A stretch of 64,000 nt of DNA. It comes from Macrostomum lignano (Eukaryota). The translations under genes were made by a program, and so were the position numbers. Positions within the stretch are counted from its first letter, which is position 1; the number at the start of each line of letters is the position of its first letter. The stretch spans positions 372,001 through 436,000 of the forward strand of contig NIVC01000352.1 of the NCBI GenBank assembly GCA_002269645.1. The letters are read 5' to 3'. The notes beneath the pieces are model-generated. The model made no database searches. It worked only from the letters and a program-made list of their open reading frames with translations, and was not told the DNA's origin. Below are positions 8,751-63,644 of the stretch, piece by piece.

Positions 8751-14845
<6,095 letters not shown>

Positions 14846-17777: not shown

Positions 17778-19073
17778 ATGTCATCGGACGCGGACACGGC
17801 CACCTTGGCCCGGCAGTGGGTCGAGACTCACATAGCCCTGTTCGTGGTCATAGTGGTCTCCGCAGTGCTGCTAGTGGTCACAATCATTGCAGTGCTAGCG
17901 TACTGCTGCTGCTGTCGAAAGAAGCGTCGAGGAAGTTGGAGCGGCGGCGGCGGCGGCGTCAAGAGCAGCGGCGGCGACAGCAGCTACGCCCAGGGGGACA
18001 GCGTGGACGCATCCTCAGCCGTAACAGCCACGGCTCGCGGGCCAAACGTAGTGGAAATTAAAGTTGAGAATGAATACCACAACCAGCAGCAGCAGGGGCT
18101 CGACTATCAAGCAACAATTGGGTCGCCAGGAATTGAGCTTAGCCAAAAGGAGTCGGCCAGCGTAGAGGATGTCAGGCTCCAGCAGTCGTCGCAAGCGGAG
18201 CTGCGCGCCGAGTTTCCTAACCTGCCGCATCTGCCGAAGGGCGTCGAGGTGACCAAAGAAGCGGAGCTACGTCTGCACGACAAGCCGCTGCAGGAAGTGC
18301 AGGCCAATTTGACGGCCGCCGCGTACGCCTCGGCTGCCGCCTCCGCTTCCGGCTCGATTGGAGTCTCTGCCGACGTCGAACCCGCGAAGCTGGACGACAC
18401 GCTGCGACTGCCACGCACCGAGGTTGTGATGCAGTCCGAGATCGAGCCGCAGCGCCAGCAGCCGCTGCGCTCCTCGCCAAAGAAGGCCGCCGCCCCGGCG
18501 CCGTCTGTTGTCATCGTTCCGCCCAAGACTGAACCGCAGCGGCGTATCCACGACGACCGTCCGTCGCACGAGCATCGGCACGGCTCCAGCATCTACCAGA
18601 GCGATGACAATGAGATAACAATTGTGGACAGCGATTTCTCCGACTACGAGGACACCCCGGAGGACGAGTACAGAAAGCGGGAGAGGAAGATAAAGTCCCG
18701 AATCGGCGCCGCGTTGGACGCCAGCATCGACATCGACGCCGGCGGCGAGGCCGACTTCGGCTGGGAGACGCTGCCGAACCAGTCGGTGACGGTGGATGAG
18801 GCGCCGGTCGTCGCGGTGGACAGACAGGGCGTGGAGTACATCCCGGCGCCGTCGCCGTCGTTGGAGGAGCAGCAGATGCGGCGGGTGGACAACCTCGCGG
18901 AGCTGGACCGGACGCTGGAAGTGTTTCAAATCGAAGCCGACGCTGAAGCGGGCAGCAACGATGGCGTCGGCATCGGCGTCTCTGTCGGCGGACAGTTAGA
19001 ATTCGGCGCCGATGTTGAACTGGTTGACGAGGAGACGATCGAGCCGCTGGACCGCAGCCAGATGCCGCATTAA
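17778..19073 (+). CDS. Intronless single-pass membrane protein, 431 aa, with a long acidic disordered tail
   Basis: GC-rich ORF with one hydrophobic helix (IALFVVIVVSAVLLVVTIIAVLAY) followed by CCCCRKKRR (palmitoylation/stop-transfer pattern). No signal peptide. The ATG overlaps a CAG|GTATGT donor-like site, so the start is slightly uncertain. Confidence 0.8.
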   Translation: MSSDADTATLARQWVETHIALFVVIVVSAVLLVVTIIAVLAYCCCCRKKRRGSWSGGGGGVKSSGGDSSYAQGDSVDASSAVTATARGPNVVEIKVENEYHNQQQQGLDYQATIGSPGIELSQKESASVEDVRLQQSSQAELRAEFPNLPHLPKGVEVTKEAELRLHDKPLQEVQANLTAAAYASAAASASGSIGVSADVEPAKLDDTLRLPRTEVVMQSEIEPQRQQPLRSSPKKAAAPAPSVVIVPPKTEPQRRIHDDRPSHEHRHGSSIYQSDDNEITIVDSDFSDYEDTPEDEYRKRERKIKSRIGAALDASIDIDAGGEADFGWETLPNQSVTVDEAPVVAVDRQGVEYIPAPSPSLEEQQMRRVDNLAELDRTLEVFQIEADAEAGSNDGVGIGVSVGGQLEFGADVELVDEETIEPLDRSQMPH

Positions 19074-23600: not shown

Positions 23601-26248
23601 TATTGAAGTTTAGGTATATAAAATCAATCCCCATGAAGATTTCCCCACCCTAAAATCCCACATTCCCCATGCCCCAGTGGTTGATAGTTGTCAGCCCCCC
23701 TTCCCTCAGTCTCCAAATTTATCTACCTAATCTTCAATAGACCTCTATGCCTCTATTGAAGTTTGGTTACATAAAATCAATCCCCATGAAGATTTTTCCC
23801 ACCTTAAAATCCAACATTACCCATGCCCCAGTTGTTGATAGTTGTCAGCCCCCCCGAGACCCTCCTCTCAGTCTCCAAATTTATCTACCTAATCTTCAAT
23901 AGACTTCCATGCCTCTATTGGAGTTTAGGTACATAAAATAAATCCCTATGAAGATTCTCCCTGCCCTAATACCTCCCATTCCCCATGCCTCAGTTGTTGG
24001 TAGTTGTTAGCCTCCCCCCTCAGTCTCTGAATTTATCTACCTAATCTTCAATAGACCCCTATACCTCTACTGAAGTACATAAAATCAATCTCCATAAAGA
24101 ATCTCCCCACCCTAAACCCCCCAATTCCCCATATCCTGATGGTTGGCTTTAAGCTACAAAAAATGATGCTCAAATTTGAATTCAGCACCATCAAAAACCC
24201 CTATAAAGACAATATTATGATCCTATTGAAACTACAACTATTTTCTCTACCTAAAGTTCAAGAAGGCCGAAAATTTGCCTATAAAAGGAAGTGAGTTTTG
24301 CCTTGAAGTAAACAACTGTCTTGCACTCTTGCACAGTTTGACTACTTGAAACAATCAGTTTGATATTACAACTTAGACATTTAAAAGAGAATTGAGAACA
24401 ACTTTTTCATTTGGGGTTCTAAGAAAGGTTCAAAAGAGGTTGCAAAGGAGATACTTAGTGATCTACTATGCAAAGCAATACTTAAAAATAGCACCATGAC
24501 ACTTTGATCTCAGTAGGCCACTCAATTGGATATATATATATATATATATACTAGTACTAGACTGCTCTGGCCAAAGCACTACTATACATAGACACTACTA
24601 GAATTAGACATTAGATGCTACTAGAATTATACATAGAATGCTACCTAGAAATGTAGACCTATTAAATCAATCAATTCTAAAAAATAATTAGACACATTAA
24701 TAGGGGAACTAGTTACTTCAGTGATAGTCAGTTTGGTGACAGTCACTTTAGTGACAACCATTTTGGTGATAGGTTACTTCGGTGACAAACGTATGTATTG
24801 AGCCAATGCAAATGGTTCAATAGGACATTTTTTGTAAAAAAACCTTTTGGTCAATAATTTAAACTCGATTTTGAATTTAAGTTAATAGCTGTCTTAGAAA
24901 TGACTGTATTTCAATGTGCTGCTAAGTGAAGATACAAAATATATTTAAGGTAGGCCTACAATATAATTTTTTGTTTAAGCAAAGGGTTTCTAAGAAATAA
25001 ACATAAAAAATTGCTCTAAGAAATAAATCTAACTCTTAATTAATATATCTTATAATTTTACCTTTACATCTATGCTTTGCTGATGTGCATGGACAAAGTA
25101 TTTTATATATTTATTTTGTAAGCTTTTGACAAGTTACATTTTCAACTAAATAATATAGCATGTTTCTGCGAAGCTGCACTTTGCTTTGAAAAGAAATCTT
25201 AAAAATTATAATATACATTATTTTTCTTAGAAACATGAAACACCTCACTTTAAACAAGCAGTATACTTCTTTTTTAAAACTAACCTATTTAAGCAAGGCA
25301 TTAAATTACGAGTGACTATTGTAGAGTATTTTTTTTCAGTTTAGATGTGAAATTATGCACACATTATTTTGTCACCAAAGTAACCTGTCACCAAAATGGA
25401 TATCACCGAAGTGACTGTCACCGAACTGACTATCACTGAAGTAGGCCCTAACCGTAATTCATTAATAGTAGGACAACTTTGGTAGCATATCAGTAGGATT
25501 TAAAAAAAGGAGAGCCAAAAAGCCTAGTAGGCCTACAACTTGGTGCTAGCAGCCAAGATTTTAATAGAGAGAAATTAACCCCTAGTATATATATTATATT
25601 TTGATTTTTATGCATTATTACCTCTAAAGTCAGCCATACACTTTTAAAAAAATTAAACAACTTATTAATTAAAATTAAATAGTTTTTTAAAAATAAAATA
25701 AAATAAATCAATCAGTCTGTTTAAATATCAAGCAGCAGCTGCATCTTTATTTTGTTACAATTGATATATTTGGAAAATTTGCCAAAATGGCCTAATATTG
25801 TTGCTGAAGTGACTATTGCCAAAATGTCTTGTCACCAAAGTGTCCTTCACCAAATTGTCTTGTTGCTAAAGTAACTGGTAGCCTATGTGATGACCATAAT
25901 AAGCATAAATATAGGCAACATAGAATGGTCTAAGGGCAAGGCTATGTATTGAATGCTAAGCTCACCAGATTGAGAAACAGAAGCGGTTGTCTTAGCAGAA
26001 GTAACAGCTGTATCCTCTTCAATAACAGATAGTTTGTCAGTTAGAAAATCATTAGATGTACATGGCTCACTGCATGTTAGGCCTAAACTAATTTTACTAT
26101 CTGCTCCAGACTCAGACTGCTGTCGAAAGAACCATGAATCATCAACTTTAGCCTCCTCAATGCAATCAAGCTTTTGCGGACAGTCTATGCTATCAAACAT
26201 ATTGCTTTCAAACGAATTAGGTCTACACGTCCCTGGTTTAAAATCCAT
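20683..26248 (-). CDS. TPX2: TPX2-like protein, two exons (26248-25966 and 21008-20683), ~202 aa
   Basis: Exon 2 (absent from the ORF track) encodes a coiled coil then LRAASVPKAQPIRHYKPMRIHRSEKPLTVAKSPDF, matching the TPX2 C-terminal domain as I recall it (LVHKANPIRKY...SDQPLTVPVSPKF). Exon 1 has DCPQKLD...DDSWFF, resembling the Aurora-A-binding DAP...DSWF motif. The phase-1 donor TCTG|GTGAGC and phase-1 acceptor TGTAG|AT are compatible. Confidence 0.8.
21071..21530 (+). mobile_element. ~450-bp MITE family, copy 2 (TPX2 intron)
   Basis: Matches 16147-16593 along its length. Confidence 0.85.
22266..22692 (-). mobile_element. ~450-bp MITE family, copy 3, inverted (TPX2 intron)
   Basis: Reverse complement of copies 1 and 2, more diverged. 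Confidence 0.8.
23554..24145. repeat. ~153-162-bp tandem repeat, 4 units, each with an internal hairpin
   Basis: Units start at 23554, 23707, 23869 and 24021. Each contains cttcaataga...tcta(t/c)tgaag. Confidence 0.9.
24701..25450. mobile_element. Foldback-like non-autonomous element with ~85-bp modular TIRs
   Basis: Left tacttcagtgatagtcagtttggtgacagtcac...ggtgacaaa; right arm is its reverse complement. Arms are built of ~15-bp GGTGAC subunits. Confidence 0.75.
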
Positions 26249-27203
26249 CTGATAAATCTACTCACTAGGCCTAAATAAACTTAGCAAGAGGTCGTCACAA
26301 GTTTTATAATAGATGCCTATAGACTATAGTATAGGGCCGAGTGATGATTAGATCTAACAGAGTTCTTTATTTAGTTTCGATCTGACTCACTCACACTGGA
26401 TTCGATTTAACTAGTTAAGATTGGTAAGATCGTAGGCCTAAGATCAGTGTAACTCGATCCCCGCTGGGAAAAAGATCACAAGCATCCAGTTCATCCAACG
26501 TGAGCCGCGAATTTAAATTTGCTGAAAAGCGAGTTCCTAGAAAGCTCAGAGAATGCTATTCACGAGTAAAATAAACACATACGCTCATAGTCGGATCTAA
26601 ATGGTTGGAATTGTTTACCAAAAGAGTTTGATTCTCAGTAGAATTGTTTGCTCAAACCCAGCAATTATTTTAGCTTAAAACCTCATCATATGACACCCAG
26701 GCATCTCACCAAAGTCCCTTAGCAGTCTTATGCAACACAAAGTTGCTTCAGCTCTTTCATGTGGCAGTACAGAATATTAAGCTTTTCACGAATATTATTT
26801 CCAGAACCAGAATAATTCCGATTCCAGAACCAGAATCGGTAGGAAAATGAAAAGCTTCGAACTCATTTTATGTTTTTCAGTCTTTACAATGTACATGTAA
26901 TTTGTCTTTCCTTGACTTTGTTTACTCTTGGATATGGCAAAAAAACAGATTAATAATATAGCAATTGACGATTTCAAATATATTTTACTGTTAAAGCGTA
27001 AACATGACAATTCGGATCCAGAAATTTTCTCGATCCAAATTCCAGAACCAGAACACGGTTCTGGAACCAATTCTGAAAATGGAGCAGGTAATTATATGAA
27101 GCTCAAAAACCGATCGATTCTCTGATTCTGGAATTTGTAAAATGAACTCATTAGTTCAAAGATACCGCGCTACTTACTGTACGAAAAATTACGAAGGTGA
27201 GTG

Positions 27204-27256
27204 ACTTATCCCATGGACAACTAGAGTAGACTACTCTAGTTGTCCATGACTTATCC
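27204..27256. mobile_element. 37-bp palindromic transposon remnant with an 8-bp TSD
   Basis: acttatcc + CATGGACAACTAGAGTAG-A-CTACTCTAGTTGTCCATG + acttatcc; perfect 18-bp arms. Confidence 0.9.
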
Positions 27257-27989
27257 GTGCAGCAATGCCAGGTACGTGATTTTTGCCCGTATTTAGGACA
27301 CAATTTTTATGCAATGCTGATTTTGGGCGTCCAAAACTGATCAGCGTTCTATATTTCATATATTTGAAATAGAAATACAACAATATGAAAGTCAAGTTTT
27401 CATTATGGAACTATATAAAACACAGCAGAGTAACATATTTTGCATGCTAAATTAACGAAATGTTATAATCTTCTCATCCCCAGAGCTGATCAGATCAAAT
27501 GCGAATCATTGATTTCTTTATGAAAAAATGAATATTTATCGCCGCTGATATTTTTCAGGAAATTATAGCCTTAAAAAATTACAGGATCTATGAGTTTTAC
27601 GTTCTGTTATACTGGTCATTGGTGGAACCTCGAGGCATCTTTCGCGATCTGGTGCTCGACTGGTCCCCCCACCTTTGGAAATAAATCAATTTCTGGCGCA
27701 GATTCCTATACCCTATAAAAGCTCCCTCTCTCTAGGATCATAAGTTCACCTGGGGAGAAGTATAGTTCGGTCGATAGCGAGCGGTCCCCCTCCTGGTGTC
27801 GGGCCAGCCTAGTGGGTTCTTTAATTCGGCCAACTGCCCGGTCAGGTGGAGCGGCCGGGTGGGAATTAACCGCGCCCCTTCGAGGTTATAGCCCGGCCCC
27901 TAACCTTCGTCGGCAGATCCGACGAAGCTCTTAATGAGGCTCGGCTTGGGCGCAAACGCGCTACGAGGGTAAAACAAACGACAATACCT

Positions 27990-28750
27990 TTCGTGGTTTT
28001 TGTCCCTGCAAAGAGCATCACTGCCCAATGCTTGAAGATGCTTGAAGAAGAGCACCACTGCCAGATTGGAACCTACAATCATTCGATGGATGGAGCCACC
28101 CAATTGCAGCGGGAATTGTTACTGAGGATTTCATGCGACCGTGCGGTCAGAACTTTCAAGGCTTTCAAATCTCCTGGACCCGATGGTATTTACCCTGTTC
28201 TTCTTCGCGAAGCAGCTAAGACACCCACGTTCTTAAGACTTACCCGCAATCTCATGCGGTCCTCTATTCCTCTGTTCCCCAGCCCTTTCAACAGCTCCGG
28301 AGGTTCTTTTTGCGCCTCTCGCGAAAAGACATCCGGGCTGCCGTACCGGCTGCTTCTCCAGGCACCAGTACCTGCGGGACAATGCCACCAATGCCAACTG
28401 TAGTTTCTGCAACTCAGGTGACGAAACTGCTGAGCATTTTGTCAGCATCTGTCTCGCCTTCACGCGAGCCAGACTCACTTACCTCGGGTCATACCGGTAC
28501 ACATCAATTACTGAGGCGTGCAAACCCATAAATTTTAATCAGCTCATGCGCTACCTCCAGGCCACCCGCAAAGCTGAACTCTCCTTTTCAGAGAGCACCA
28601 TTGCTGCTGGCGACACTGGGGGACCTCCCTGGGCGGCGCCAACCCTTCGTCCATAGCGACGCGTCGGCCGTTCAGAGATTAGCGGAATAGGTATTCGCAC
28701 CTTCCCGCTGTGTCCCCTCCCAAACAGCCCAGCTCAAGTCAAGTCAAGTT
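27990..28750 (+). pseudogene. Internally deleted LOA/R1-type non-LTR retrotransposon fragment
   Basis: DRAVRTFKAFKSPGPDGIYPVLLREA (RT N-terminal region) is joined to LSRKDIRAAV and CSFCNSGDETAEHFVSICLAFTRARLTYLG (C-terminal CCHC finger). Ends in a short caagtcaagtcaagt tail. Confidence 0.75.
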
Positions 28751-29199: not shown

Positions 29200-30140
29200 G
29201 GCAGGCACTCATTTTGGCGCCGCAGGCACTCATTTTGGCGCCGCAGGCACTCATTTTTGCGCCACAGAAACTCATTTTGGCGCCGCAGGCACTCATTTTA
29301 GCGCCGCAGACACTCATTTTAGCGCCACAGGCACTCATTTTAGCGCCGCAGGCACTAATTTTAGCGCCGCAGGCACTCATTTTTGCGCCACAGAAACTCA
29401 TTTTAGAGCCGCAGGCACTCATTTTTGCGCCACAGAAACTCATTTTAGAGCCGCAGGCACTCATTTTGGCGCCGCAGGCACTCATTTTTGCGCCACAGAA
29501 ACTCATTTTGGCGCCGCAGGCACTCATTTTAGCGCCGCAGACACTCATTTTAGCGCCACAGGCACTCATTTTAGCGCCGCAGGCACTAATTTTAGCGCCG
29601 CAGGCACTCATTTTGGCGCCACAGAAACTCATTTTGGCGCCACAGAAACTCATTTTGGCGTCACAGAAACTCATTTTAGCGCCACAGGCACTCATTTTAG
29701 CGCCGCAGGCACTCATTTTAGCGCCGCAGACACTCATTTTAGCGCCGCAGACACTCATTTTAGCGCCACAGGCACTCATTTTAGCGCCGCAGGCACTCAT
29801 TTTAGTGCCGCAGACACTCATTTTAGCGCCGCAGAAACTCATTTTAGCGCCGCAGGCACTCATTTTGGCGCCGCAGGCACTCATTTTAGAGCCGCAGGCA
29901 CTCATTTTAGAGCCGCAGGCACTCATTTTAGCGCCGCAGGCACTCATTTTAGCGCCGCAGGCACTCATTTTAGCGCCGCAGGCACTCATTTTAGCGCCGC
30001 AGACACTCATTTTAGCGCCGCAGGCACTAATTTTAGCGCCGCAGGCACTCATTTTAGCACCGCAGGCACTCATTTTAGCGCCGCAGGCACTAATTTTAGC
30101 GCCGCAGGCACTCATTTTAAAGCCGCAGGCACTCATCTTG
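29200..30140. repeat. 21-bp minisatellite, ~45 units
   Basis: Unit gcaggcactcattttagcgcc. It is stop-free in several frames, which gives the spurious 315-399-aa ORFs. Confidence 0.97.
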
Positions 30141-31451
30141 GCGACTGCATGTACAGGCAGGAATTCACTTTGTTGCCGCAGGTGCTATATTTTGGCGCCC
30201 AGAAACAAAATTATTGATTTCCACAACGGGTTACAAGGTGGGGTGGGGCCGGACAAAGCATTGGCATGTCGAAAATTATTGCCCCAAATTATACATGTTG
30301 GGGTTACATTCTTTAATTTTAAATCTACATAAATAACCTATGTCAACCGAGGTAAATGTACATATTTACATGTACAGTTGCAAATGCTAAATAATCTATC
30401 GCAGATAAAGTCAAATTAGGCAACGTATTTAGTCATACCGGTATTGTACCATGTATAGTCTAGACGAAATTTATTTAAGCAATTTTTATTGAAAGTTACA
30501 CCGCTCAATTAAATTTTTCTTAGCTCGATAGCATATATAATCAATAAATTAGCAATTAGAATAGCAAAATAATGAAAGCAGGGGCAAAATCAAATTTGCG
30601 AAAATCAACAGAAGAAAAAGAAATTTTACTGACAATCCGAAAGCAACAAGTCAGTTTGCAATCCAATAGTCGATCTGTGTCTAATTAAAAATATGGTATT
30701 TGATAAATATATATTCCATTCCATGTAGTGATTTACCAACTAGGATAACAAAGAATAAAAGTCGTACGGCCAGACTGCGATGGGATGTAAATTGTGGCCA
30801 CAGAAAATCATTAAGACTAAAAGTACGAAGCACATTTTATGAAAGGTTTTTAACAAAGAACTGATCAATCACGGTCAGCAACCAGATCAGTCAGAATGAA
30901 TAACATAATTTATACCACCTTAATTAAAACTATAAAGATGCCATGCGGAAAGTTTTATAGCAAACAAGAATGGCAGAACGTATCGCCTTAAAACTACGCG
31001 TATATTGTAACAAATGATATATGCTCGTATTATTGATTGGCGAGAATGGCGCAAACTGCATTCTATATATATTTATGTTTGCGCATTGGATGCATATTCA
31101 GGGCGTTTGAGCTCTCAAAACTGCCGTTAGCGCGCGTGTGACCAGACACTGGCCGACGGGCCAACTAACAAATCATTGATGGTCACAATAATAATAATAG
31201 TAATAAAGATAGAAATAATAAAGAAATAAGAAAATAAAGATTGAACGCGCGATTACGGACCAATGGCCAGCCAAAATGAGCCAATGTCTAAGCTGTCCAG
31301 TGCTTGCAGGGCCGAGACTGAACAGCGCTGATCGGGTGGAATGGGCGATGCGAGAGCTGGGGCAAGCAAAAATAATTGTCATATCCTCAACTATCACAAT
31401 GAAACTCGGGAAAGGGGGTCTGGACGGCGGGCGGAGGCGGTTCAGCGCTTA

Positions 31452-34400
31452 TCAAAAGAACTTTGAATTGTCGAAGGCCTCATTGTCGATGCCGCCGCTG
31501 CGGCTGGAGCCTTGAACTGCTTCGACGATGCCACTGACTTCGCCGCCAGTGCTAGGCGATGGGCCTTCTATCGATTGCGAGTCGTCACCGTCAGGACCAG
31601 CCATGGGCAGCTCTAAAAACTCCCGCTCGGCAACGGGGATCTCAGACGGAGGGCTGTTCACTGTCACATCGTCGACTTTTGATGTCGGACGGGTCGACGA
31701 TTCAGCTTCGGCGTTGACCGGCGCTGACGCCACGGTGTTACTATCAATGTTGATATCCTCGACGTTGACAGACGGCTGGCCGAGGTACCTGCGAAGTGTC
31801 CCGTTTCACGTGCATTTTTAATAATAATGCTTGGCAAATGGCTGGCGAAGCATCGCTAAGCTGCTAATTTCTGAGTCAATGGGTGCGAGTTGAACAAGGT
31901 CTGTCGTGTGTTGTCAAGTGTGCTCTCCTAGTATAGAGAACGAATGGGGTTTTGCCATAGACAAATTAGGTGGAGAAAAAATCAAATTCCTCTAGAGAAT
32001 TACTAAACTCACTAGCGATGCGACAACTTTTTCGTTGCCCCAGCTCATTTCTAAGAAAATCGAATATACTGTCAGTTCCCATGAGGATATCCTGGATTTA
32101 TGGTAAAAATTCAACTTTCTATTTGTTGATTGCTCTAAGAAAAACATGTTAGACATGTTACACTACTTCATCTATGGGCTCTGCTTCTCCGCCAGTCATT
32201 TTTGTCTATGGTCAAAAGTCATTTCGGGACCAGTTAGAGCCATTTAAGTTTCATTTCATTGAAGTTCAGGCTATAGACATACCAATCCCCCACTTGCCTA
32301 GGGTGTGAGTCCATTGTGTCACACCTGCTGAATTTGGCCATGGACTACATGTTTGACTAGTCGTAGCAAATGATGGCGCTCGGTTGACGGGGAAATGACG
32401 GCCATAATAAAATCTTCACGCAGTCAAAATGCTTGTAATTTGTATCATGTTGATTTCTCATGGACTTTGCCCTTGAAAACAGTATTCGCTGCACTTGTCT
32501 CTCGCATATTATTAGAATAAATCAATATTCGCAAGAGGGCTGTGCGCAGCGTGACGCAACTCCTTAGGGGACATCGTCCCGCAGCCAGCATCTGCCCGTT
32601 CCGCTGACTCCTGAGCACATGCAAGCGCGCCAATACTGTACTCAGGCACGCACTCACACACCGCTCACACAGGGTGTACAGCAGCCCTGACTTTCTAGTC
32701 ATCAGGCATGTACACTCTCTGTGCCTTGGGGCTGGCCCTTGGGGCTGGCACGACAAAACCAAGGGTCATGGCGCGAGGCCAATATAACAGAACTTCACCT
32801 GTTCATGTCCAGATTGGCGAAGTCGGTCATGCAGGTCAGCACGTAGCTGGGGAAATTCTCCCCTGGCGGAGCTTCAACGCTGAACTCGTCCGGCCCGGTG
32901 GCCGTGTCGCCGTCGCGCACAGCGAAGGAGCCGGTGACGCGGACCTGCAGCAGGAAGCGGCGGGAGGACCGCTCCACGGGGAACTGGCACTCGCGGTTGC
33001 GCTTGATGGCAACGGCGTCCAGCTCGCACGGCACGTGCAGCCGACGGGCGCCGGCGGACGAGAGTGGCGCCATTTCAACGTCCGCGGCTCTGGAGGCGGC
33101 AATCGTTGCCGAGACCGAGCTGATGGCGGATGCGGTGGCGGCAGCTGGGACCATGATGGGGTGCCGGTAGCCGTACCGGCTGGGCCGGCATCTGCCAAGA
33201 GAGAGCGAGTGCAGCGAGTGTTCAGCGAGTTGCACTTTTTCACAAGCCGGTCTTTCTGTTGGCATTCTATGGAGTAGCTTGTTTTACCAGATGTTTGAAA
33301 TGTCTGCAACAATAACTACTTATCACCATGTCAGAAACATTAAAATCTAGGAAGCTTACAAACCTGAGAAAAATCAAACAAATTTAAAATCGAGACGAAA
33401 GTCTATCGAACCCGACCCGACACAAACCTAAAAAACCCAAAGACACAAACCTACAAAACCCAAAGACACAAACCTACAAAACCCAGACACAAACCTACAA
33501 AACCCGACAAGACACAAACCTACAAAACCCAGACACAAACCTACAGAACCCGACAAGACACAAACCTACAAAACCCAGACACAAACCTACAGAACCCGTG
33601 AAGAGACAAGACACAAAGACACAAACAAGCAGAAAATCAAAATAGACAAACATAAAGATACACGGACATGAACAGCTGCCGTTTACACATTAAGAATATT
33701 TCGCAGACGCACCTGCCAGTCGTTCTCGAGCGTTTCCGACGAATCCGTTTAACCTGCGACTTGCCGCTGGCCTCGTCCCGGTGCAAGTAGAGCAGCGCCG
33801 GGGCCCTGAACATCTCGCGCATGTCCCAGTCAACTGTGCGCCCGACAACCCGGGCTCGAACTTTGCGCCTGCAGGGGCAGCAGCTGAGCACTCCGGATCC
33901 GTGATAGTCTGGCGTGAACACCAGCGACTGCAGGTCCACCTCGGCGATGTCGCCTCGGCAGTGCAGGAATGCGTAAAGAAGCAGCCGGCAGATGTACCTG
34001 CGGGCGGAGTTCGACTCAATATATTGCGGTCTAAAAGACCTCTTGTTGGGTTTTGTAGGCTGTTTCCCATTTGAACTTTTAGATTTGTCTCTTTTTGGGT
34101 TTTGTAGGTTTGTGTCTTTTTGGGTTTTGTAGGTTTGTGTCTTTGGCTTTTGTAGGTTTGTGTCTTTTTGGGTTTTGTAGGTTTGTGTCTTTTTGGGTTT
34201 TGTAGGTTTGTGTCTTTTTGGGTTTTGTAGGTTTGTGTCTTTGGGTTTTGTAGGTTTGTCTCTTTGTGGGTTTTGTAGGTTTGTGTCTTTGGGTTTTGTA
34301 GGTTTGTCTCTTTGTGGGTTTTGTAGGTTTGTGTTTTTGGGTTTTGTAGGTTTGTGTCTTTTGGGTTTTGTAGGTTTGTGTCTTTGGCTTTTGTAGGTTT

Positions 34401-37117
34401 GTGTCTTTTTGGGTTTTGTAGGTTTGTGTCTTTTTGGGTTTTGTAGGTTTGTGTCTTTGGCTTTTGTAGGTTTGTCTTTGGCTTTTGTAGGTTTGTGTCT
34501 TTTTGGGTTTTGTAGGTTTGTGTCTTTATGGGTTTTGTAGGTTTGTGTCTTTTTGGGTTTTGTAGGTTTGTGTCTTTTTGGGTTTTGTAGGTTTGTGTCT
34601 TTGGCTTTTGTAGGTTTGTCTTTGGGTTTTGTAGGTTTGCGTTTTTGGGTTTTGTAGGTTTGTGTCTTTGGCTTTTGTAGGTTTGTGTTTTTGGGTTTTG
34701 TAGGTTTGTGTCTTTGGGTTTTGTAGGTTTGTGTCTTGTCGGGCTTGGAAGGTTTGTGTCTGTGGGTATTGTAAGTTTGTGTCTTCAGGTTTTGTCGTTT
34801 ATGTATTTTCGGTTTTGTAAGCTTCTATTTTCAAGTTTATCTTTTCAGCTTTTGTAGTCTCGTGTCTTGTCGGGTTTTGTAGGATGTGCTGTGTCAGCGA
34901 TTTCTGTAGGTTTGCGTCTTCTCGGGTTTTGTAGGTTTGTGCCTTTATCGGCGCGCTACTGCTGAGCAACTCTGGCAAACAAAGTCTTTACTCAAGTACT
35001 TCACTGTGTTTGCTATCCTTGGCTGAAGTTCATGGCGCTCAACTAAAAAACCTAGTCCACAGCACTTGAGGTAAATGTAGTGCATGCCCTTGTCCCTCAC
35101 CTAGCGACCCGCCTGACGTCCTCGGGCGCGCGCAGGGCGCCCAGCTGCCACTCGTAGACCAGGCAGAACTGTCGCAGCAGCCGCAGGGCGGTGCCCCGAG
35201 TCCGCTCGGCCGCTTCAGAGTCGACAAGAAGGCGGCCGATTCGCGAGTTCGGCCGGGCGCCCCGGCTGCGCCGCTTAGCCAAACTCGACCAGGCCTCCTC
35301 GCTGCTGCTCAGAAATTCGCGCAAGTTCTGATCATACCTGAGCAACTGGACGGGTTTGGCGCGGTGTAAGCCATTAGCCATGCATAAGCATATTTTTCTG
35401 CATGTGACAGTACATCTGGGCACATCGTTAGGAAATCGGCCTTCAAACTCTTCTTAAAATTGTGTTGCAAATTTTAGTTTAAATTGCAACTTTTACGAGT
35501 ATAAGCTCGTAAACATTTTACGACGCACTCGCCACTCACTTCCGGAAATTGCGTTTCTTGGTTTCGATTTGGATTTCAATCAAAACCATTAAAATGAGCT
35601 TAATGTACTGTTTCACTACAGAACCTGTTCAGCTATTCAGCAGCAACTGATTCATGGGCGCTGTGCAGAGTGAGGCACTGAGAGAGACTAAGTGAGGCAA
35701 TCGGAGAGTGACTGAGTGAGGCACTGAGAGAGACTAAGTGAGGCAATCGGAGAGTGACTGAGTGAGGCACTGAGAGAGACTAAGTGAGGCAATCGGAGAG
35801 TGACTGAGTGAGGCACCATGAGTGACTGAGGCAATGGGAGAGTGACTTGTGAGGCAATGGGAGAGTGACTTAGTGAGGCAATGGGAGAGTGACTGAGTGG
35901 GGCGCTGGGAGAGTGTCTGAGTGAGGCACTGATAGAGACTGAGGCACTGAGAGAGTTACTGAGTGAGGCACTGAGAGACTGTGAGGCACTGAGAGTGACT
36001 GAGTGAGGCACTGATAGACTGAGTGAGGCACTAAGAGAGTGACTGAGTGAGGCGCTGATAGACTGAGTGAGGCACTAAGAGAGTGACTGAGTGAGGCGCT
36101 GATAGACTGAGTGAGGCACTAAGAGAGTGACTGAGTGAGGCACTGAGAGACTGTGAGGCACTGATAGAGACTGTGAGGCACTGAGAGTTACTGCAGGTAG
36201 TAAATAAATTAGATGCGTAAGTAAGCCGACACAGCAAGATATGATAATGAAAATTTAGAAACAAACGATAACATATAAGAATATTGCACTCATAGGCGCG
36301 TATATTGAATTAACTTTAATTAGAGTGCCGTAGCGATTTTTAAAGCTGGATAAATAAGTGAAAAAGCAACAAAAACAGAAACACACACAAAAACGGCAAA
36401 AGTAGGTTAAACAGGTTTATGAACGACAAACTATTTATTACATAAGTAGATCGCGTAGCGTAATAATACATTAATCTATATAATTGTGAAGATCTGTTAA
36501 GCTAGATAGACAGCCACTTAGAATCAGAAAACTCACCTGATCCTGATCCGTCAGGTGTTGTACAATGTCGATGCCGCTAATATTATTAATGTAATTATAA
36601 TTATAATATTAATATTATTAGCTAGTAGAGCTGCGCAGCTGAGAATGCCTATTGACCAGCATCAGACAGATCTGATTGAATAATTTCCCAGCGCAAGAAT
36701 ACTAGAGAGGGAAGAGATAGAATTGCCTTGGGACGCAGAAACTTTATAGAACACAGTTCGGCCTATCGGACAGACCAGAAGAAGAGAAGTAAATTATAGA
36801 GAGAGAGGGAGAGACTGACTATTCTGCGGTGCGCACCGGTCTGAGGCTAAATAAAATAGGATCCCTCCTCCCTCCTACCCGGCGTTCGACGGCTTACTCC
36901 TGGCTTGTGGAGGCAAGAGAGGGGCAGGCAGGCAGGCAGGCGATAAGGTTGAGCTGAGCATTGGGCCTCAACACACAGCAGTGCAGGCACTGCAGCAGCC
37001 ACCCCAGTACGTGCATGGCCTATTGAATAGGCGGCGGCCAGGAGAGGGGGAGAGGGAGGGAGAGGGAGAGGGGGACGGCGGGGGGCGGGCCTGACACGGC
37101 CGCCGGCGTTGAAGCAT
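31452..37117 (-). CDS. Multi-exon protein of unknown function (~441-472 aa)
   Basis: Phase-consistent exons 36576-36537, 35345-35101, 33997-33713, 33191-32799, 31788-31452. The 5' end is either 37117-37098 plus a 6-nt microexon at 36903-36898, or one exon 37016-36898. No family recognised. Confidence 0.7.
33410..33630 (+). repeat. ~23-25-bp minisatellite (acacaaacctacaaaacccaaag)n
   Basis: Read directly; lies in the intron on one side of exon 33713-33997. Confidence 0.9.
34045..34945 (-). repeat. Same minisatellite in the opposite orientation, (ttttgggttttgtaggtttgtgtc)n
   Basis: Reverse complement of the 33410-33630 unit; lies in the intron on the other side of the same exon. Confidence 0.9.
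35660..36190. repeat. Compound GA-rich minisatellite (gagtgaggcactgagagagact-type units)
   Basis: Recurrent gtgaggca and gagtgact units. Confidence 0.9.
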
Positions 37118-37510: not shown

Positions 37511-49101
<11,591 letters not shown>

Positions 49102-50315: not shown

Positions 50316-50990
50316 TGTGACGAATAAAGGCGGGAAGACGTACGGTTTGTGTAGCGGTTAAATTCGATCATCTAGAGCCAGCGGCCGACTTCCCTTAGCG
50401 TTATTTGCAGATTTGGTATGTTGAATTGAATGTTAGATTTGGATTGGTAGCTGCTTAATTTTAGTGCGACTAAAGCAATTGAATGCGACGGCTAAGGGGG
50501 CCGCGAGAAGCGGAGCGAAAACCCAGGAGTGAAGGGCGAGAGCGGCGGCTGACTGCAAGCGTATATTTAATTGGTAGGTAAACAGATAACAAACAACAAC
50601 ACCCCTAATCCAAAACCCAGACAAACCCCCCACGCGGCGCGCAATGTACATGTACAAATTAATCGATAAATTATATCGTGTAAGAATAACATACGCCAGT
50701 ACATGTACTACCCAAGGACGACTTAAGTCGTCCTTGGTACTACCATGTAGGTAGAACTACTTTACAAGAAATAATAACGATATGAATGAAATACAAATAA
50801 TAGAATAAATACATACGAGGCTACAAAAACAAAGCAATTAACTGTAACATTAGTGCAATAATAATGCGTATAGAATATTGTTAAAATTTTAAGAATTTAA
50901 GAATTCTTAAAATTTAAGAATACAAGTAGTACGGTATGCATGCGAGATAAGGAAATACGATCAGATGATTCTACGAATTACACTGTCACA
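50316..50990 (-). repeat. Gypsy LTR, ~675 bp
   Basis: Starts TGTGAC at 50990 right after the PPT and ends GTCACA at 50316 (6-bp terminal inverted repeat). No second LTR in the window to confirm it. Confidence 0.65.
50705..50744. mobile_element. 24-bp palindromic transposon remnant with an 8-bp TSD
   Basis: gtactacc + CAAGGACGACTT-AAGTCGTCCTTG + gtactacc. Confidence 0.9.
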
Positions 50991-59893: not shown

Positions 59894-60365
59894 GCTCAGC
59901 TAGTGGAGGAGTGACATTCAGCGATTCCGAGTAATACAGCAAAGAGATCTGCTTGAGCCTGAGGGCGAAGCAAAATATAGCCAGTCGGATCGCAGTCTGT
60001 GCGTACAATATGCCGCACACTCTGCCAGCGCTCAGTGACAGCTCATCACTAGGTGAATCTCTTAACTCTAATCTTGGGGCAACTTGGCATAGAGACGAGG
60101 CGTACAATGAGAAGGCCTGTACACTCGCCTGACCACACCTATATAATGAACTTTGGCTAGGCATGTGACCACTGACACTTGCAATGCCCTCCATTCGACC
60201 GCAAAGTACGTTTTGGCTTCTACGAGTATGTAACAGGCGGTGGCACGTCGAGCCACGGTTTAGCGATAACGGGTTCTTATTTGCCCTGTTTTTCTTTTAT
60301 ACATAAATCTCAGCAAAACTAAAGCAATACTTGCAGTTTTCCAGCATTCTTAGTTTAATGTTCTG

Positions 60366-62411
60366 CAAGGACTACTTAAACTAGGGATGGGAAACTGGCC
60401 AAATCATGCAGAAAATAGTTGGAGGCTGGTTTTTTCTAGCGCTCCCTAGAATTTTAGTGAACGTAGAAAGCTGGTTTTTCGCCATCCTGAACAGAATTTA
60501 TTCCTCTATAAGATGCACAACTTATTTTTTGTCGAGCTTCATTTTGAGAGTAGCAGTGAGCTTTTTTGTACGGTACTCCTTTTTTTCACAGTGTTTTTAT
60601 AGAGAATGCCTTATAAAAATCTGCAGTCAGACGGATTTTTGTCTATGGTATAAAACGCATCATCACTATACATGTAACACTTGTGTATCAATTGAGCATG
60701 CAACGAAGGCTTTGCTTTAGTCTGTCTGATGACTGATAGAGCCTGATACATGTATATGAATGAAGAGCTTAGCTAAAGTCGAAAAACTCTAGCAAGCCAA
60801 CTTTTTTCGAGCCAAGCTCACGAGGCCCCCGTCGGGTAGAAAATTAACACAGAGCTACCCGGATGTAGCGAGGCTGCGGTAGCTGCTAGAGCGCAATGAG
60901 AACTTGTTCGCCAAGCACGAGTTCGACCTGGGCACAACGGATCAGCTGCAGCACCAGGTACAACGGGAAAACGGGTACAACGGGAACGCGGCCGCACCGG
61001 CAAATCCAAGCAGCGCCGTCTGCCTCTGTCTGTGCGAGACCAGGTGGATAAAAAGATTTTACAGATGCTGGACAGCGGCATCATCGAGCCGTCGTCGTCG
61101 CCATGGGCGAACAACCTGCTGGTGGTCCGCAAGAACGGCAAAATGCACGGACGCTGAATGCCTGCACGGACGCGTACCCGCTGCCTCACATGCAGCAAGC
61201 ATGAATGCTCTGGTCGGGTGCTTCTGGTTCTCCACCATCGACTGTCGGCAGGGCTACCACCAGGTGGAGGTGGCGGAAGAGGACCGGTTTAAAACTGCTT
61301 TCTATTCGACCCGCGGCCTGACGCAGTTCCACAAGACGGGCTTTGGAATTTGCAATGCCCCAGCGACGTTCCAGCGGCTGATGGAACTGGTGATGTCCAG
61401 TCTGTCCAGGGACTCCGTGCTGACTTACATCGACGACATCATCGTCTTCAGCAGGACCTTTGACGAGCATCTGGTGAGACTTGAGCGCGTTTTTTAACGG
61501 CTGCGAGATGCGGGTCTCAAACTGCACAATGCGAAGAGCGTGTTCGGCCATCGCCGGGTGCTGTACCTGGGACATTTGATCAGCGAGCAGGGTATTGCAC
61601 CGGACCCCAGCAAGTTTGAGGTCATTCGCAGCATCCCTAGTCCAAAGTCGGTCGAAGAGGTGAACATTCTGACCATTGCCGAATACTTCTTTCCTGGTCA
61701 CGACTTTCCAGCACTTTCCAGTACGACTGTCGAATTGCTTTTTTGAAGACCTTGTCTAGCGCTACAAGACCAAAGACCAAAGTCGGCTGTCCACTGTTGA
61801 ATGTGCCATGAGTCGAGACTGACTGACACACGACACCATGTAGAGGTTTATAATACATATTTGTGAAATTTTGAGTGCTTATATGTCCACAAAATATATC
61901 TAGCAATACGTACGTACAGTCACCGACTGCGACTGTGTGAAAAAATCGTCTTCTGCTTTCCCTTTGCTCTTTTCCATTGCCCCCCCCTCCGAATTCACGT
62001 GGCTCGGTTTCAGAGTAATTGCAGAGCAATTCTTTTAGATTAATGACAAGGAAAATTATATTCTTTATTCAGTTAGTCAAGGCTAATTTTTAGATGACGC
62101 AGCAGAAGCGGCTACAAGCTTAACAGCGATGATGCTTGTGCAGAAACCCTAGACATTTCAATAAGGCGTTTGCTGTGTTAAATTCCCTAGAAAAAGGGGG
62201 TCCTGTACAAAAAAAGCTCACTGCTCCTCTCAAAATAAAGATCGACAAAAAATAAGTTGTGCATCTTGTAGAGGAATAAATTTTGTACAGGATGGCGAAA
62301 AACCAGCTTTCTACGTTCACTAAAATTCTAGGGAGCGCTAGAAAAAACCAGCCTCCAACTATTTTCTGCAAGATTTGGCCAGTTTCCCATCCCTAGTTAA
62401 AGTAGTCCCTG
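60366..62411. mobile_element. 2046-bp non-autonomous DNA transposon with ~206-bp TIRs and a perfect 8-bp TSD (P-like or hAT-like)
   Basis: atgttctg on both sides. Ends CAAGGACTACT / (rc) CAGGGACTACT. TIRs 60366-60571 and 62205-62411, which explains the near-identical ORFs at 60406(+) and 62120(-). Confidence 0.92.
60850..61665 (+). pseudogene. Ty3/Gypsy reverse-transcriptase fragment inside the TIR element
   Basis: FAKHEFDLGTT, IIEPSSSPWA, FSTIDCRQGYHQV, KTAF, FGICNAPATFQRLM, LTYIDDIIVFS, YLGHLIS. Frameshifts and an in-frame stop; no LTR, gag or integrase. Confidence 0.9.
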
Positions 62412-63644
62412 ATGTTCTGTTGATCTTATCGCTGACCTATTCTATTCTAAAACAAGGCTTGCTCAATGATGAAAGTAACATTTTGTGTGATGTTTTGGTT
62501 TTGGTTCTAAACTTCAAGAGCTCAAATGATAAAATCTAGATCTATCTAGATATTTTTTAAACTTGATAATCGAGAGTGCATCCCGTGCTTTACAAAAATG
62601 CGCGTAGTACAATGAAACTGCTCAGGAATAGACCAGATTTTGCAGCTCACTTGGCGACATCAAACGTTCTCAACTGCAGTTCTTGTCTATTGCGCCGCGG
62701 CCATCGCCCAGCAGGCCAGATGAAACGCTACTACTGTACAATCGACGCAGCCAATGACCAACTGGGTTTGGCACCAGGAAGACGCCAAAGAAGACCATGG
62801 AAAAGTACAGCCCGGGACAGATCTCGTACGAGCTCGTAGTGGCCCAGACCGAAGGCAATGTTCAGTAGACCGGCTATCAGAGCGTGCCGAACGCCCTGCA
62901 GTTGCGCTTGCTGTAAATGTCGAATGAGATGTATTGTAAACTGTCGAATATCTTGTTACTTGATTCTCCTGAATATGAAGCAGGTTGCAACAAGTGAGCC
63001 ATGCCATTAGCTGAGCTGCTGTAATTCACAAGTCCAGCAAGTCCGAACTTCCAGCTGACGCTGACGCCCAAACTAGCTCGTATTTTTTACTTTACTACGA
63101 GCGCGTATATTTGCTTTCGTTTTGTTTGCGCCGAGTAAACAGTTTGTAAAGTAAGCTCCCAGTACTACTAAGCACTAATGACGCTACTTAACGTCCATAT
63201 TCGCGAGAAAAGGAGTCATTTTGAATGCCAAATTCTCCAACTTCTAGTACCAAGTACTACGGTAAATAGCATGAGGATCGGAGGCATGTCAACCTACTCG
63301 TAGTTCTAGAATGGCTTAGTTTCTCTGTCAAACCCGACTATTGGATCGGCGATGAGAGTAGAATCTTGAAATAACAGAAGACCATACTGGAGACCCATCG
63401 AAGCTGGAGACCCATGGATCTCTAGACCTATCGAATAAAGTACGCTGTTCTGTTTCGAACTAAATTGACACCCCATTCTGATCTATTCTGGGTAAACTAA
63501 CGCGCAATCGACCTTTAAGGCCTCCAACGATTCCAGATCAATTCGAGCCCAAAATAAATAAACATCTACAATAAGCCACACATGTATAAATCACATCTGT
63601 CTCTAGCATCACAGGTTGAAATCAATCAATCAGCTTAAACTGAC

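What the first reader, a model, noticed from the sequence alone, without database searches (positions are those of the whole stretch)
27204..27256. 37-bp perfect palindrome with an 8-bp TSD: probable P-element-type excision footprint
Seen: 18-bp arm, 1 nt, 18-bp arm, between identical 8-mers (acttatcc). Established: P-element transposase cuts with a ~17-nt stagger, so donor-site repair keeps roughly 15-18 bp of each TIR plus both TSD copies. hAT excision hairpins the flanking host DNA instead and does not keep TIR ends. CATGG fits the P terminal consensus CANRG but not hAT YARNG. Inference: this is a cut-and-paste scar, not a tiny MITE, and it implies a P/THAP9-type transposase in this genome.
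Basis: partly seen in the sequence, partly recalled or inferred. Interest (0 to 1): 0.78.

Follow-up and report, generated by a model that had tools for sequence, protein, structure and literature searches.

The report
Transposon excision scar in a flatworm
The 37-bp palindrome is what remains of a cut-and-paste DNA transposon that inserted into one copy of this Macrostomum lignano locus and later left; such scars are a known kind of feature, here unusually well documented, and it does not yet show which transposase made it.

Summary
ACTTATCC, an 18-nt arm, A, an 18-nt arm and ACTTATCC sit at 27204-27256, far beyond chance.

The window is Macrostomum lignano, assembly Mlig_3_7, contig NIVC01000352.1. 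This redundant assembly of a hidden polyploid holds two more copies of the locus:
- **Copy C is empty.** It carries one ACTTATCC and no palindrome.
- **Sister copy B has the same 8-bp duplication and a 37-bp insert.** Its centre is T rather than A. The outer 8 nt of its right arm are replaced by a copy of nearby flank.

So this is a real insertion with an 8-bp target-site duplication (TSD), now reduced to its two ends.

The window also holds a 2,046-bp element with related ends (CAAGGACTACT), an 8-bp TSD and its own empty site in C. It holds a second TSD-flanked palindrome too, with 12-nt arms joined at TTAA.

The architecture matches published Drosophila P-element repair junctions. A long-stagger (P-type) cut followed by end joining is therefore the best explanation.

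P-superfamily membership is unproven:
- I found no parent element with these exact ends.
- I found no P or hAT transposase in about 225 kb.
- The CATGG argument is weak, because relatives end in CAAGG, CAGGG and CACGG.

Interrupted gap repair remains a live rival. Interest is modest.

The parts
27204..27211 (.). left copy of the 8-bp target-site duplication ACTTATCC
   Evidence: Copy C has a single ACTTATCC at the same place.
27212..27229 (+). left arm: the first 18 nt of the lost element's left end, CATGGACAACTAGAGTAG
   Evidence: Identical in copy B. It matches the end of the 2,046-bp element at 9 of 11 positions, anchored at the terminus, P about 1e-4.
27230..27230 (.). junction base: A here, T in copy B
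27231..27248 (-). right arm: the last 18 nt of the lost element, a perfect reverse complement of the left arm
   Evidence: In copy B only the inner 10 nt are present and the outer 8 nt read CCGTGCAG.
27249..27256 (.). right copy of the target-site duplication ACTTATCC
50705..50744 (.). second scar of the same kind: GTACTACC, CAAGGACGACTT, AAGTCGTCCTTG, GTACTACC (24-bp palindrome 50713-50736 between 8-bp direct repeats)
   Evidence: Its arm matches the left end of the 2,046-bp element at 11 of 12 positions, P about 2e-6. The junction lies on TTAA, which is present at positions 11-14 of that element's end.
60358..62419 (.). intact relative. The element spans 60366-62411 (2,046 bp). Its TIRs are about 220 bp (60366-60585 and 62191-62411, 93.7% identical). 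Its ends are CAAGGACTACTTAAACTAGGG and CAGGGACTACTTTAACTAGGG. Its 8-bp TSD ATGTTCTG lies at 60358-60365 and 62412-62419. The interior holds a gypsy-type reverse transcriptase fragment and no transposase.
   Evidence: Copy C has the empty site with a single ATGTTTTG. Copy B has the element with the same TSD and ends CACGG/CACGG.
9678..10007 (.). 330-bp MITE-like element with related ends, CAAGGATCACTGCAG and CAAGGACCACTGTAAG, and TIRs of about 70 bp. Its flanking 8-mers no longer match.
   Evidence: A truncated copy lies at L007 16848-16947.

Best explanation
A DNA transposon of a local family inserted at ACTTATCC and duplicated those 8 bp. The family's ends read CA-N-GGAC-N-ACT and it makes an 8-bp TSD. 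The insertion happened in the common ancestor of copies A (the window) and B, after that lineage split from copy C. The element was later cut out by a transposase that cleaves one strand well inside each end. Each donor flank was left with a 3' tail made of the element's own first 17-19 nt. This is the chemistry known for the P-element transposase. Host end joining then joined the two tails almost tip to tip. Because the two tails have the same sequence, the product is a palindrome between the two TSD copies.

Shown: the insertion, the TSD, the empty site, the family of related ends, and the identity of the architecture with sequenced P-element junctions. Inferred: the excision itself, the position of the cut, and the kind of transposase.
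For: Organism and copies. The window is M. lignano Mlig_3_7 contig NIVC01000352.1.

(1) Empty site. Copy C (NIVC01001232.1) reads ...GGTGAGTG ACTTATCC GTGCAT... with no insert.

(2) Tree. In 2,099 ungapped columns around the site there are 55 C-unique, 14 A-unique and 14 B-unique substitutions. A and B are therefore sisters (1.3% apart) and C is the outgroup (3.3%). The insert is in A and B only.

(3) Copy B (NIVC01001361.1) has the same TSD and the same 37-bp length. It reads CATGGACAACTAGAGTAG T CTACTCTAGT CCGTGCAG. The 8-nt patch is a copy of the flank 14 nt downstream. Patches of this kind, 5-8 nt long and templated by adjacent sequence, are described at Drosophila P-excision junctions (PMC2895639).

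(4) An intact relative sits in the window. It has an 8-bp TSD, ends matching at 9 of 11 positions, and its own empty site in C.

(5) A second scar at 50705-50744 has 12-nt arms that match that relative's end at 11 of 12 positions. Its junction lies on TTAA. That is the product expected if two identical 3' tails of at least 14 nt anneal at their only self-complementary tetranucleotide.

(6) Only these two TSD-flanked palindromes occur in 224 kb, against 0 in 30 shuffles. Both have arms of 19 nt or less.

(7) Published P{wa} junctions read TSD-CATGATGAAATAACATA-(0 to 3 nt)-TATGTTATTTCATCATG-TSD, which is the same layout. The 17-nt stagger is peculiar to P transposase (PMC7776569). hAT enzymes instead hairpin the flanking DNA (PMC3878927).

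(8) The third base of the family's ends takes all four letters, while bases 4-5 are always GG. This fits CANRG for every member and YARNG for only some. Both consensus rules are from my own knowledge of the Repbase classification.

(9) None of the three intact TSDs fits the hAT target NTNNNNAN (rule from PMC3878927).
Against: No longer element with the ends CATGGACAACTAGAGTAG was found. The nearest relative differs at 2 of the first 11 bases and diverges after base 13.

No P-type (THAP plus Tnp_P_element) or hAT transposase domain occurs in any ORF of at least 70 aa in the window. None occurs in the ORFs of at least 50-80 aa that I scanned in the non-window parts of the other loci. The only THAP protein seen (L008 8701-9522) has no transposase part.

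The arms are 18-19 nt, not 17 or fewer. This needs a longer stagger, a few nucleotides of repair synthesis, or a lucky G...C filler.

Copy B lacks the outermost 8 nt of the right end, which simple trimming of a 3' tail cannot produce. B is therefore either a complex templated junction from a separate excision or a later mutation. If B were ancestral, the perfect palindrome in A could be a secondary quasi-palindrome correction.

The sample is two scars. The cut position is inferred from products only.
Confidence: 0.58

Rival explanations
1. Interrupted gap repair. The element was excised by any cut-and-paste transposase, hAT included, with cuts at the element boundary. The gap was then repaired from the sister chromatid or homologue that still carried the element. 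Synthesis copied only about 12-19 nt inward from each end before the nascent strands were end-joined. The result is an extreme internal deletion rather than a true overhang scar.
For: The product would be identical: both TSDs, both ends, and a microhomology or 1-nt junction. [quoted passage not shown] Arms of 18-19 nt exceed the 17 nt of the Drosophila tail. The family includes non-autonomous, internally rearranged members. No P transposase was found.
Against: Repair synthesis tracts are usually tens to thousands of nt and differ on the two sides. Here both known scars have short arms (12 and 18-19 nt) that are symmetrical. No intermediate-length remnant was seen in 224 kb. The junction of the second scar uses the first self-complementary tetranucleotide available within a 17-nt tail.
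Confidence: 0.22
2. Centre-break deletion of a long-TIR copy. A family member with long inverted repeats (70-220 bp TIRs exist) extruded a hairpin or cruciform and was cut at the tip by host nucleases. It was then resected and rejoined between the two arms. No transposase was involved in the loss.
For: Family members with TIRs of 220 bp and about 70 bp are present. Joining two identical arms at a self-complementary microhomology gives a symmetrical palindrome whatever made the break.
Against: The known long-TIR members have spacers of 0.2-1.6 kb, which disfavours hairpin extrusion. Resection would have to stop within 19 nt of the outer ends in both independent cases without ever entering the TSD. 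No partly shortened long palindromes were seen.
Confidence: 0.07
3. The 37-bp palindrome is itself a tiny mobile unit (a micro-MITE) that inserted as such.
For: It has perfect terminal inverted repeats and an 8-bp TSD, and the site is empty in copy C.
Against: There is no second copy in the window at up to 3 mismatches. The only other copy in the M. lignano loci fetched from other contigs is the orthologous one in B. Four exact 18-mer hits in metagenomes lack the partner arm and are at chance level. The second scar has a different sequence and length. From established knowledge of P and hAT elements, transposases need subterminal binding sites that a 37-bp unit cannot hold.
Confidence: 0.03
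4. Not a two-ended remnant at origin. The original insert looked like copy B, that is one element end plus snap-back and flank-templated filler from error-prone end joining. The perfect palindrome in the window arose later by template switching within the hairpin (quasi-palindrome correction).
For: One inter-strand template switch would explain three things at once: the complemented centre base (T to A), the replacement of exactly 8 nt by the complement of the left arm's first 8 nt, and the unchanged length. A and B differ at 8 of 37 positions against 1.3% in the flanks, so one complex event is needed in some direction.
Against: It needs a complex primary junction and then a second rare event. 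The switch back to the original template has only 1 nt of homology. The second scar (50713-50736) is also a perfect two-ended palindrome and has no such history available. Even if true, the locus would still be a transposon excision scar, since the left end, the TSD and the empty site stand.
Confidence: 0.1

Closest known systems
End-joined P-element excision footprints in Drosophila melanogaster (P{wa} junctions; Chan, Yu and McVey 2010, PMC2895639)
   Same: The layout is the same: both 8-bp TSD copies, about 17 nt of each inverted-repeat end facing each other, and a junction that is blunt, has 1-3 nt of filler, or uses a 1-4 nt microhomology. Occasional 5-8 nt patches are templated by adjacent sequence. 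The window's scar is 18+1+18. The second scar is 12+12 with a TTAA microhomology. Copy B has an 8-nt flank-templated patch.
   Different: The organism is a flatworm. The end sequence is unrelated to CATGATGAAATAACATA beyond CATG. The arms are 18-19 nt rather than 17 or fewer. The transposase is unknown. The event is an old germline one seen as a difference between homeologous or haplotypic copies, not an experimental product.
P/THAP9 superfamily elements outside insects, for example zebrafish Pdre2 (PMC10983969)
   Same: 8-bp TSD, an end starting CAT, and internally deleted non-autonomous copies.
   Different: The Pdre2 TIR is CATACCTGTCAAC, 13 bp, with no similarity beyond CAT. The M. lignano family has members with TIRs of 70-220 bp. 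No THAP9-like transposase has been linked to it here.
hAT superfamily elements and their footprints
   Same: 8-bp TSD. Some family ends (CAAGG, CAGGG) fit the hAT terminal rule.
   Different: hAT excision hairpins the flanking DNA and leaves altered TSD junctions without element ends (PMC3878927). This scar keeps 18-19 nt of both ends. CATGG and CACGG ends break the hAT rule. None of 3 TSDs fits NTNNNNAN.
Internally deleted derivatives made by abortive gap repair or microhomology-mediated miniaturisation (for example MITE birth from a Tc1/mariner element in Aedes, PMC3814204)
   Same: Both ends and the TSD are kept, the interior is lost, and the junction shows microhomology.
   Different: Those products are usually tens to hundreds of bp per side and stay mobilisable. 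This one keeps only 18-19 nt per side.

Membership tests
Transposon excision footprint (general) | An orthologous or paralogous empty site with one copy of the duplicated target | tested here: met
   Copy C, NIVC01001232.1 (L002 1878-1885), has a single ACTTATCC and otherwise collinear flanks.
Transposon excision footprint (general) | Both TSD copies kept, with only terminal element sequence between them | tested here: met
   8+18+1+18+8.
Transposon excision footprint (general) | The retained sequence equals the ends of a longer element in the same genome | tested here: inconclusive
   Only relatives were found, matching at 9 of 11 and 13 of 18 positions. No element with the exact 18-mer ends occurs in about 225 kb. 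The whole genome could not be searched by DNA.
Transposon excision footprint (general) | A full-length (occupied) allele at the same site | tested here: not met
   The three copies in Mlig_3_7 are empty (C), a 37-bp palindrome (A) and a 37-bp variant (B).
P / THAP9 superfamily | TSD of 7-8 bp | tested here: met
   8 bp at three independent insertions.
P / THAP9 superfamily | Ends 5'-CANRG (rule from my own knowledge of the Repbase classification) | tested here: met
   CATGG, CAAGG, CAGGG and CACGG all fit.
P / THAP9 superfamily | An autonomous copy that encodes a THAP-domain, GTP-dependent RNase-H-fold transposase and has the same ends | tested here: inconclusive
   Pfam scans of 149 window ORFs and 87 ORFs from loci L001, L003 and L005 found no such domain. 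A THAP-only 273-aa gene in L008 has no family ends nearby. The sample is far too small to conclude absence.
P / THAP9 superfamily | A 17-nt staggered cut that leaves 17-nt 3' tails on the donor (PMC7776569) | tested here: inconclusive
   The scar arms of 12 and 18-19 nt are compatible with such a cut, but they are products, not cleavage sites.
P / THAP9 superfamily | Subterminal transposase-binding sites and internal inverted repeats | not testable with these tools
   The interior of the element is gone.
hAT superfamily | 8-bp TSD | tested here: met
hAT superfamily | Ends 5'-YARNG (rule from my own knowledge of the Repbase classification) | tested here: not met
   CATGG here and CACGG in copy B of the 2-kb element have a pyrimidine at position 3. 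CAAGG and CAGGG do fit.
hAT superfamily | Target preference NTNNNNAN (PMC3878927) | tested here: not met
   ACTTATCC, GTACTACC and ATGTTCTG: none has both T2 and A7 on either strand. With n = 3 this is weak.
hAT superfamily | Excision through hairpins on the flanking DNA, so footprints lack element ends | tested here: not met
   The scar keeps 18-19 nt of both ends. This could be reconciled with hAT only through interrupted gap repair.
MITE (mobile as a unit) | Many copies at unrelated sites with different TSDs | tested here: not met
   Only this locus and its ortholog in B carry the sequence in about 225 kb. Genome-wide this is untested.

The most novel reading that the evidence does not exclude
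The CA-N-GGAC-N-ACT family belongs neither to P nor to hAT. It would be an uncharacterised or poorly characterised 8-bp-TSD superfamily whose transposase also makes a very long (about 18-19 nt) staggered cut. Alternatively, it is a genuine P-type lineage that was active in Macrostomum after its genome duplication. Either way, the scars would be the first read-out of that chemistry in flatworms, and the three-allele series in a hidden polyploid would give a dated record of insertion and excision.
Probability: 0.15. Interest if true: 0.55.

Novelty: new member of a known kind. Interest (0 to 1): 0.33.

Why it matters
Long-tailed excision scars are so far a signature of P-element transposase, which is known mainly from insects, with THAP9 relatives in vertebrates. 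If this flatworm family makes them, scars alone could be used to infer cleavage chemistry for transposon families whose enzymes have never been studied. M. lignano is a regeneration and transgenesis model, and it would gain a candidate endogenous cut-and-paste system.

The locus also gives a clean natural series of alleles, which is useful for dating transposon activity relative to the genome duplication:
- empty;
- scar;
- scar with a templated patch.

In itself, a transposon footprint is an ordinary feature.

Tried and rejected
1. Chance or assembly artefact. Rejected on shuffles, the empty site, and presence in two independent contigs.
2. A structured RNA gene. Rfam gave no hit on the palindrome in 26200-28300 at E up to 1.
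3. Literature search for the 18-mer, its 12-mer core and six family ends. It returned only unrelated primers. Searches for M. lignano together with P or hAT found nothing on these families.
4. Metagenome scan for the 18-mer. It gave four hits, none with the partner arm, which is chance level.
5. Looking for a P or hAT transposase to use as a query from M. lignano itself. None occurs in the window ORFs or in the ORFs scanned from the extra loci. The 2-kb element's interior is a gypsy reverse transcriptase fragment.
6. The third protein search went to the intact Tc1-like transposase (3943-4989), in the hope of many genomic copies to sample. Only one M. lignano relative appeared. Exact look-ups of window proteins failed twice.
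7. The THAP gene in L008 and the neighbouring 582-aa ORF. There is no transposase domain and no PDB relative.
8. Looking for the source copy of the 3.4-kb A-specific segment that carries the second scar. No gene is called inside it, so nothing could be looked up.
9. The 255-bp difference at 27894-27912 is a deletion inside a LINE fragment, not an excision.
10. The 3.7-kb insert specific to C has no TIRs.
11. A search for CANRG and YARNG in the paper library found nothing relevant. Those two rules therefore rest on my own knowledge.

Full report
**The observation.** The window reads ACTTATCC (27204-27211), CATGGACAACTAGAGTAG (27212-27229), A (27230), CTACTCTAGTTGTCCATG (27231-27248), ACTTATCC (27249-27256). 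The arms are 100% complementary. The 18-mer has no other copy in the window even at 3 mismatches, with 0.02 expected. The 8-mer occurs only at these two places. In 20 block shuffles the longest perfect palindrome arm was 8-12 nt. No shuffle in 30 gave a perfect palindrome with arms of at least 8 nt flanked by an exact 8-bp direct repeat.

**Where the window comes from.** An intronless alkylglycerol monooxygenase gene (58487-59893, minus strand) is 99% identical to a Macrostomum lignano protein. A 431-aa ORF (17778-19073) is 100% identical to another. Locus L004 matches window 10683-30994 at 100%. The window is therefore NIVC01000352.1 positions 372001-436000 of assembly Mlig_3_7 (GCA_002269645.1). 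The literature describes this species as a hidden polyploid with a redundant assembly (PMC12801592). That redundancy turned out to be the key resource. The cluster look-up and five gene look-ups recovered two further copies of the locus. Copy B is NIVC01001361.1 and copy C is NIVC01001232.1.

**Three states of one site.**
- Copy C reads ...GAAGGTGAGTG ACTTATCC GTGCATCAATG.... It has one ACTTATCC and no insert, with collinear flanks on both sides.
- Copy A, the window, has 45 extra bases: the 37-bp palindrome plus the second ACTTATCC.
- Copy B has the same two ACTTATCC copies and also 37 bp between them. It reads CATGGACAACTAGAGTAG T CTACTCTAGT CCGTGCAG.

In 2,099 ungapped columns around the site there are 55 C-unique, 14 A-unique and 14 B-unique substitutions. 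A and B are therefore sisters, 1.3% apart, and C is the outgroup at 3.3%. The insertion arose on the branch leading to A and B. The alternative, that C lost it precisely, is less simple. This establishes a real insertion with an 8-bp target-site duplication and rules out chance.

**How A and B differ.** They differ at 8 of 37 positions against 1.3% in the flanks, so point mutation is not the cause. The centre base is complemented (A against T). The outer 8 nt of the right arm (TGTCCATG) are replaced in B by CCGTGCAG, an exact copy of the last 2 nt of the TSD plus 6 nt of right flank, which lies 14 nt downstream. I see three readings, and I cannot decide among them with three alleles:
- The common ancestor of A and B still carried the element, and it was excised twice. 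A is an almost tip-to-tip join. B is a join with snap-back and flank-templated filler. Filler of this kind, 5-8 nt long and copied from adjacent sequence, is typical of Drosophila alternative end joining (PMC2895639). The equal length would then be a coincidence.
- There was one excision, followed by a template-switch mutation in B.
- B is ancestral and A was made perfect by quasi-palindrome correction. This explains the centre flip, the 8-nt replacement and the unchanged length in one step, but it needs a complex primary junction.

All three readings leave the locus a transposon scar.

**A family with these ends exists in the window.**
- At 60366-62411 there is a 2,046-bp element with TIRs of about 220 bp (93.7% identical). 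Its ends are CAAGGACTACTTAAACTAGGG and CAGGGACTACTTTAACTAGGG, and its 8-bp TSD is ATGTTCTG.
- Copy C has the empty site for this element, with a single ATGTTTTG. Copy B has the element with the same TSD and ends CACGG/CACGG.
- Its end matches the palindrome arm at 9 of the first 11 positions, anchored at the terminus (P about 1e-4).
- Its interior is a gypsy-type reverse transcriptase fragment and holds no transposase.
- A 330-bp MITE-like element at 9678-10007 and further ends (19124; L007 16947) share CAAGGA(C/T)CACT.

At least two members of the family inserted within 35 kb on the same A/B branch.

**A second scar.** The only other TSD-flanked perfect palindrome in 224 kb of M. lignano sequence is at 50705-50744: GTACTACC, CAAGGACGACTT, AAGTCGTCCTTG, GTACTACC. 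Its arm matches the 2-kb element's left end at 11 of 12 positions (P about 2e-6). The junction lies on TTAA, which occupies positions 11-14 of that end. Two identical 3' tails of at least 14 nt that anneal at their self-complementary TTAA would give exactly this 24-bp product. This scar lies in a 3.4-kb segment (49472-52864) that is absent from both B and C, so I could not find an empty site for it.

**Mechanism.** P-element transposase is set apart from other cut-and-paste enzymes by a 17-nt staggered cut (PMC7776569). Each donor flank is left with a 17-nt 3' tail of element sequence, and the two tails are non-complementary (PMC2895639). Sequenced P{wa} junctions from that paper read acccagac-CATGATGAAATAACATA-(nothing, 1-3 nt, or a 1-4 nt microhomology)-TATGTTATTTCATCATG-acccagac. 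This is the same layout as both scars here. By contrast:
- hAT enzymes hairpin the flanking DNA and leave no element ends;
- Tc1/mariner enzymes leave 2-3 nt;
- piggyBac leaves nothing (PMC3878927).

A long-stagger cut followed by end joining is therefore the best-supported mechanism. I put it at about 0.58. The broader statement that this is a transposon remnant I put above 0.95.

**What is not shown.**
- I found no longer element with the exact ends.
- I found no P-type or hAT transposase domain in the window ORFs of at least 70 aa, nor in the ORFs scanned from the extra loci. The one THAP protein seen is not a transposase.
- The arms are 18-19 nt, one or two more than the Drosophila tail.
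Taken as a family, however, position 3 takes all four bases and positions 4-5 are always GG. That fits the P rule CANRG for every member and the hAT rule YARNG for only some. Both rules are from my own knowledge (one search found no source in the library).
- None of the three TSDs fits the hAT target NTNNNNAN, but three sites are few.

**Rivals.**
- Interrupted gap repair after excision by any enzyme gives the same product and is common in flies. It predicts a broad, asymmetric spread of arm lengths, and two short symmetrical scars speak only weakly against it (0.22).
- Centre-break deletion of a long-TIR copy is possible but needs resection to stop within 19 nt of the outer ends twice (0.07).
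- A 37-bp mobile unit is unlikely. There are no other copies, and the metagenome hits are at chance level (0.03).
- The quasi-palindrome-correction history is discussed above (0.10).

**Verdict.** The transposon-scar interpretation is supported by an empty site, a sister allele, a related intact element and a second scar. The P-type cut is the best mechanistic reading, but membership in the P superfamily and the presence of a P/THAP9 transposase in this genome are not demonstrated. This is a new example of a known kind of feature, of modest interest. The decisive tests are genome-wide searches that these tools could not run on a eukaryotic assembly.

Noticed in passing
window 50705-50744: A second 8-bp-TSD-flanked perfect palindrome: GTACTACC, CAAGGACGACTT, AAGTCGTCCTTG, GTACTACC. 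Its ends are related to the finding and its junction lies on TTAA.
   Followed up: yes
window 60358-62419: A 2,046-bp element with 220-bp TIRs, 8-bp TSD ATGTTCTG and ends CAAGG/CAGGG, carrying a gypsy-like reverse transcriptase fragment. It is absent from copy C (empty site) and present in copy B. In B both ends read CACGG, so both termini differ from A at position 3 although the copies are only a few percent apart. This is unexplained.
   Followed up: partly
window 49472-52864: A 3.4-kb AT-rich segment present only in copy A, flanked by the direct repeat ACAAGTCATA(A/G)AAA. It has no TIRs, no poly-A tail and no called gene. Its origin is unknown.
   Followed up: partly
window 9678-10007; also 19124 and L007 16848-16947: A 330-bp MITE-like element with TIRs of about 70 bp and ends CAAGGA(T/C)CACTG. 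A lone matching end lies just after the 431-aa gene and is conserved in all three copies. A truncated copy lies on another contig.
   Followed up: partly
L005 5716-6556 (reverse-complement positions 13757-14597); window 24540-24545: An 839-bp TA-flanked MITE with TIR CAGTGTTGGGCA (Tc1/mariner type) is present in copy B and absent from the window, where a (TA)n run sits.
   Followed up: no
window 3943-4992: An intact 349-aa Tc1-like transposase ORF (HTH plus DDE_3). Its closest database relatives, at 79-82% identity, are on short contigs of unknown source, and only one M. lignano relative (66% identity) was found.
   Followed up: partly
window 511-951 and 44000-44700: Fragments of mariner-type transposases (HTH_48 and Transposase_1 hits).
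   Followed up: no
window 27990-28650: The 3' part of a non-LTR retrotransposon ORF2 (a ...KSPGPDGI... motif and a C-terminal zinc knuckle). The window lacks about 255 bp that copies B and C have at 27894-27912.
   Followed up: partly
window 10870-12329, 29201-30143, 34080-34785, 37715-39430, 42063-42602: Large micro- and minisatellite arrays: (TGTC) about 365 copies, a 21-bp unit x45, a 25-bp unit x30, a 28-bp unit x62 and a 24-bp unit x23. They create long spurious ORFs in several frames.
   Followed up: no
L008 8701-9522 (contig NIVC01003819.1): A single-exon 273-aa gene with an N-terminal THAP domain and no transposase domain. A 582-aa ORF without any Pfam or PDB match lies 2.4 kb downstream on the same strand. 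It sits beside a paralogue of the alkylglycerol monooxygenase gene.
   Followed up: partly
window 27196-27203: The insertion site lies immediately after AAG|GTGAGTG, a good 5' splice-site match, but no gene is called there in any of the three copies.
   Followed up: no
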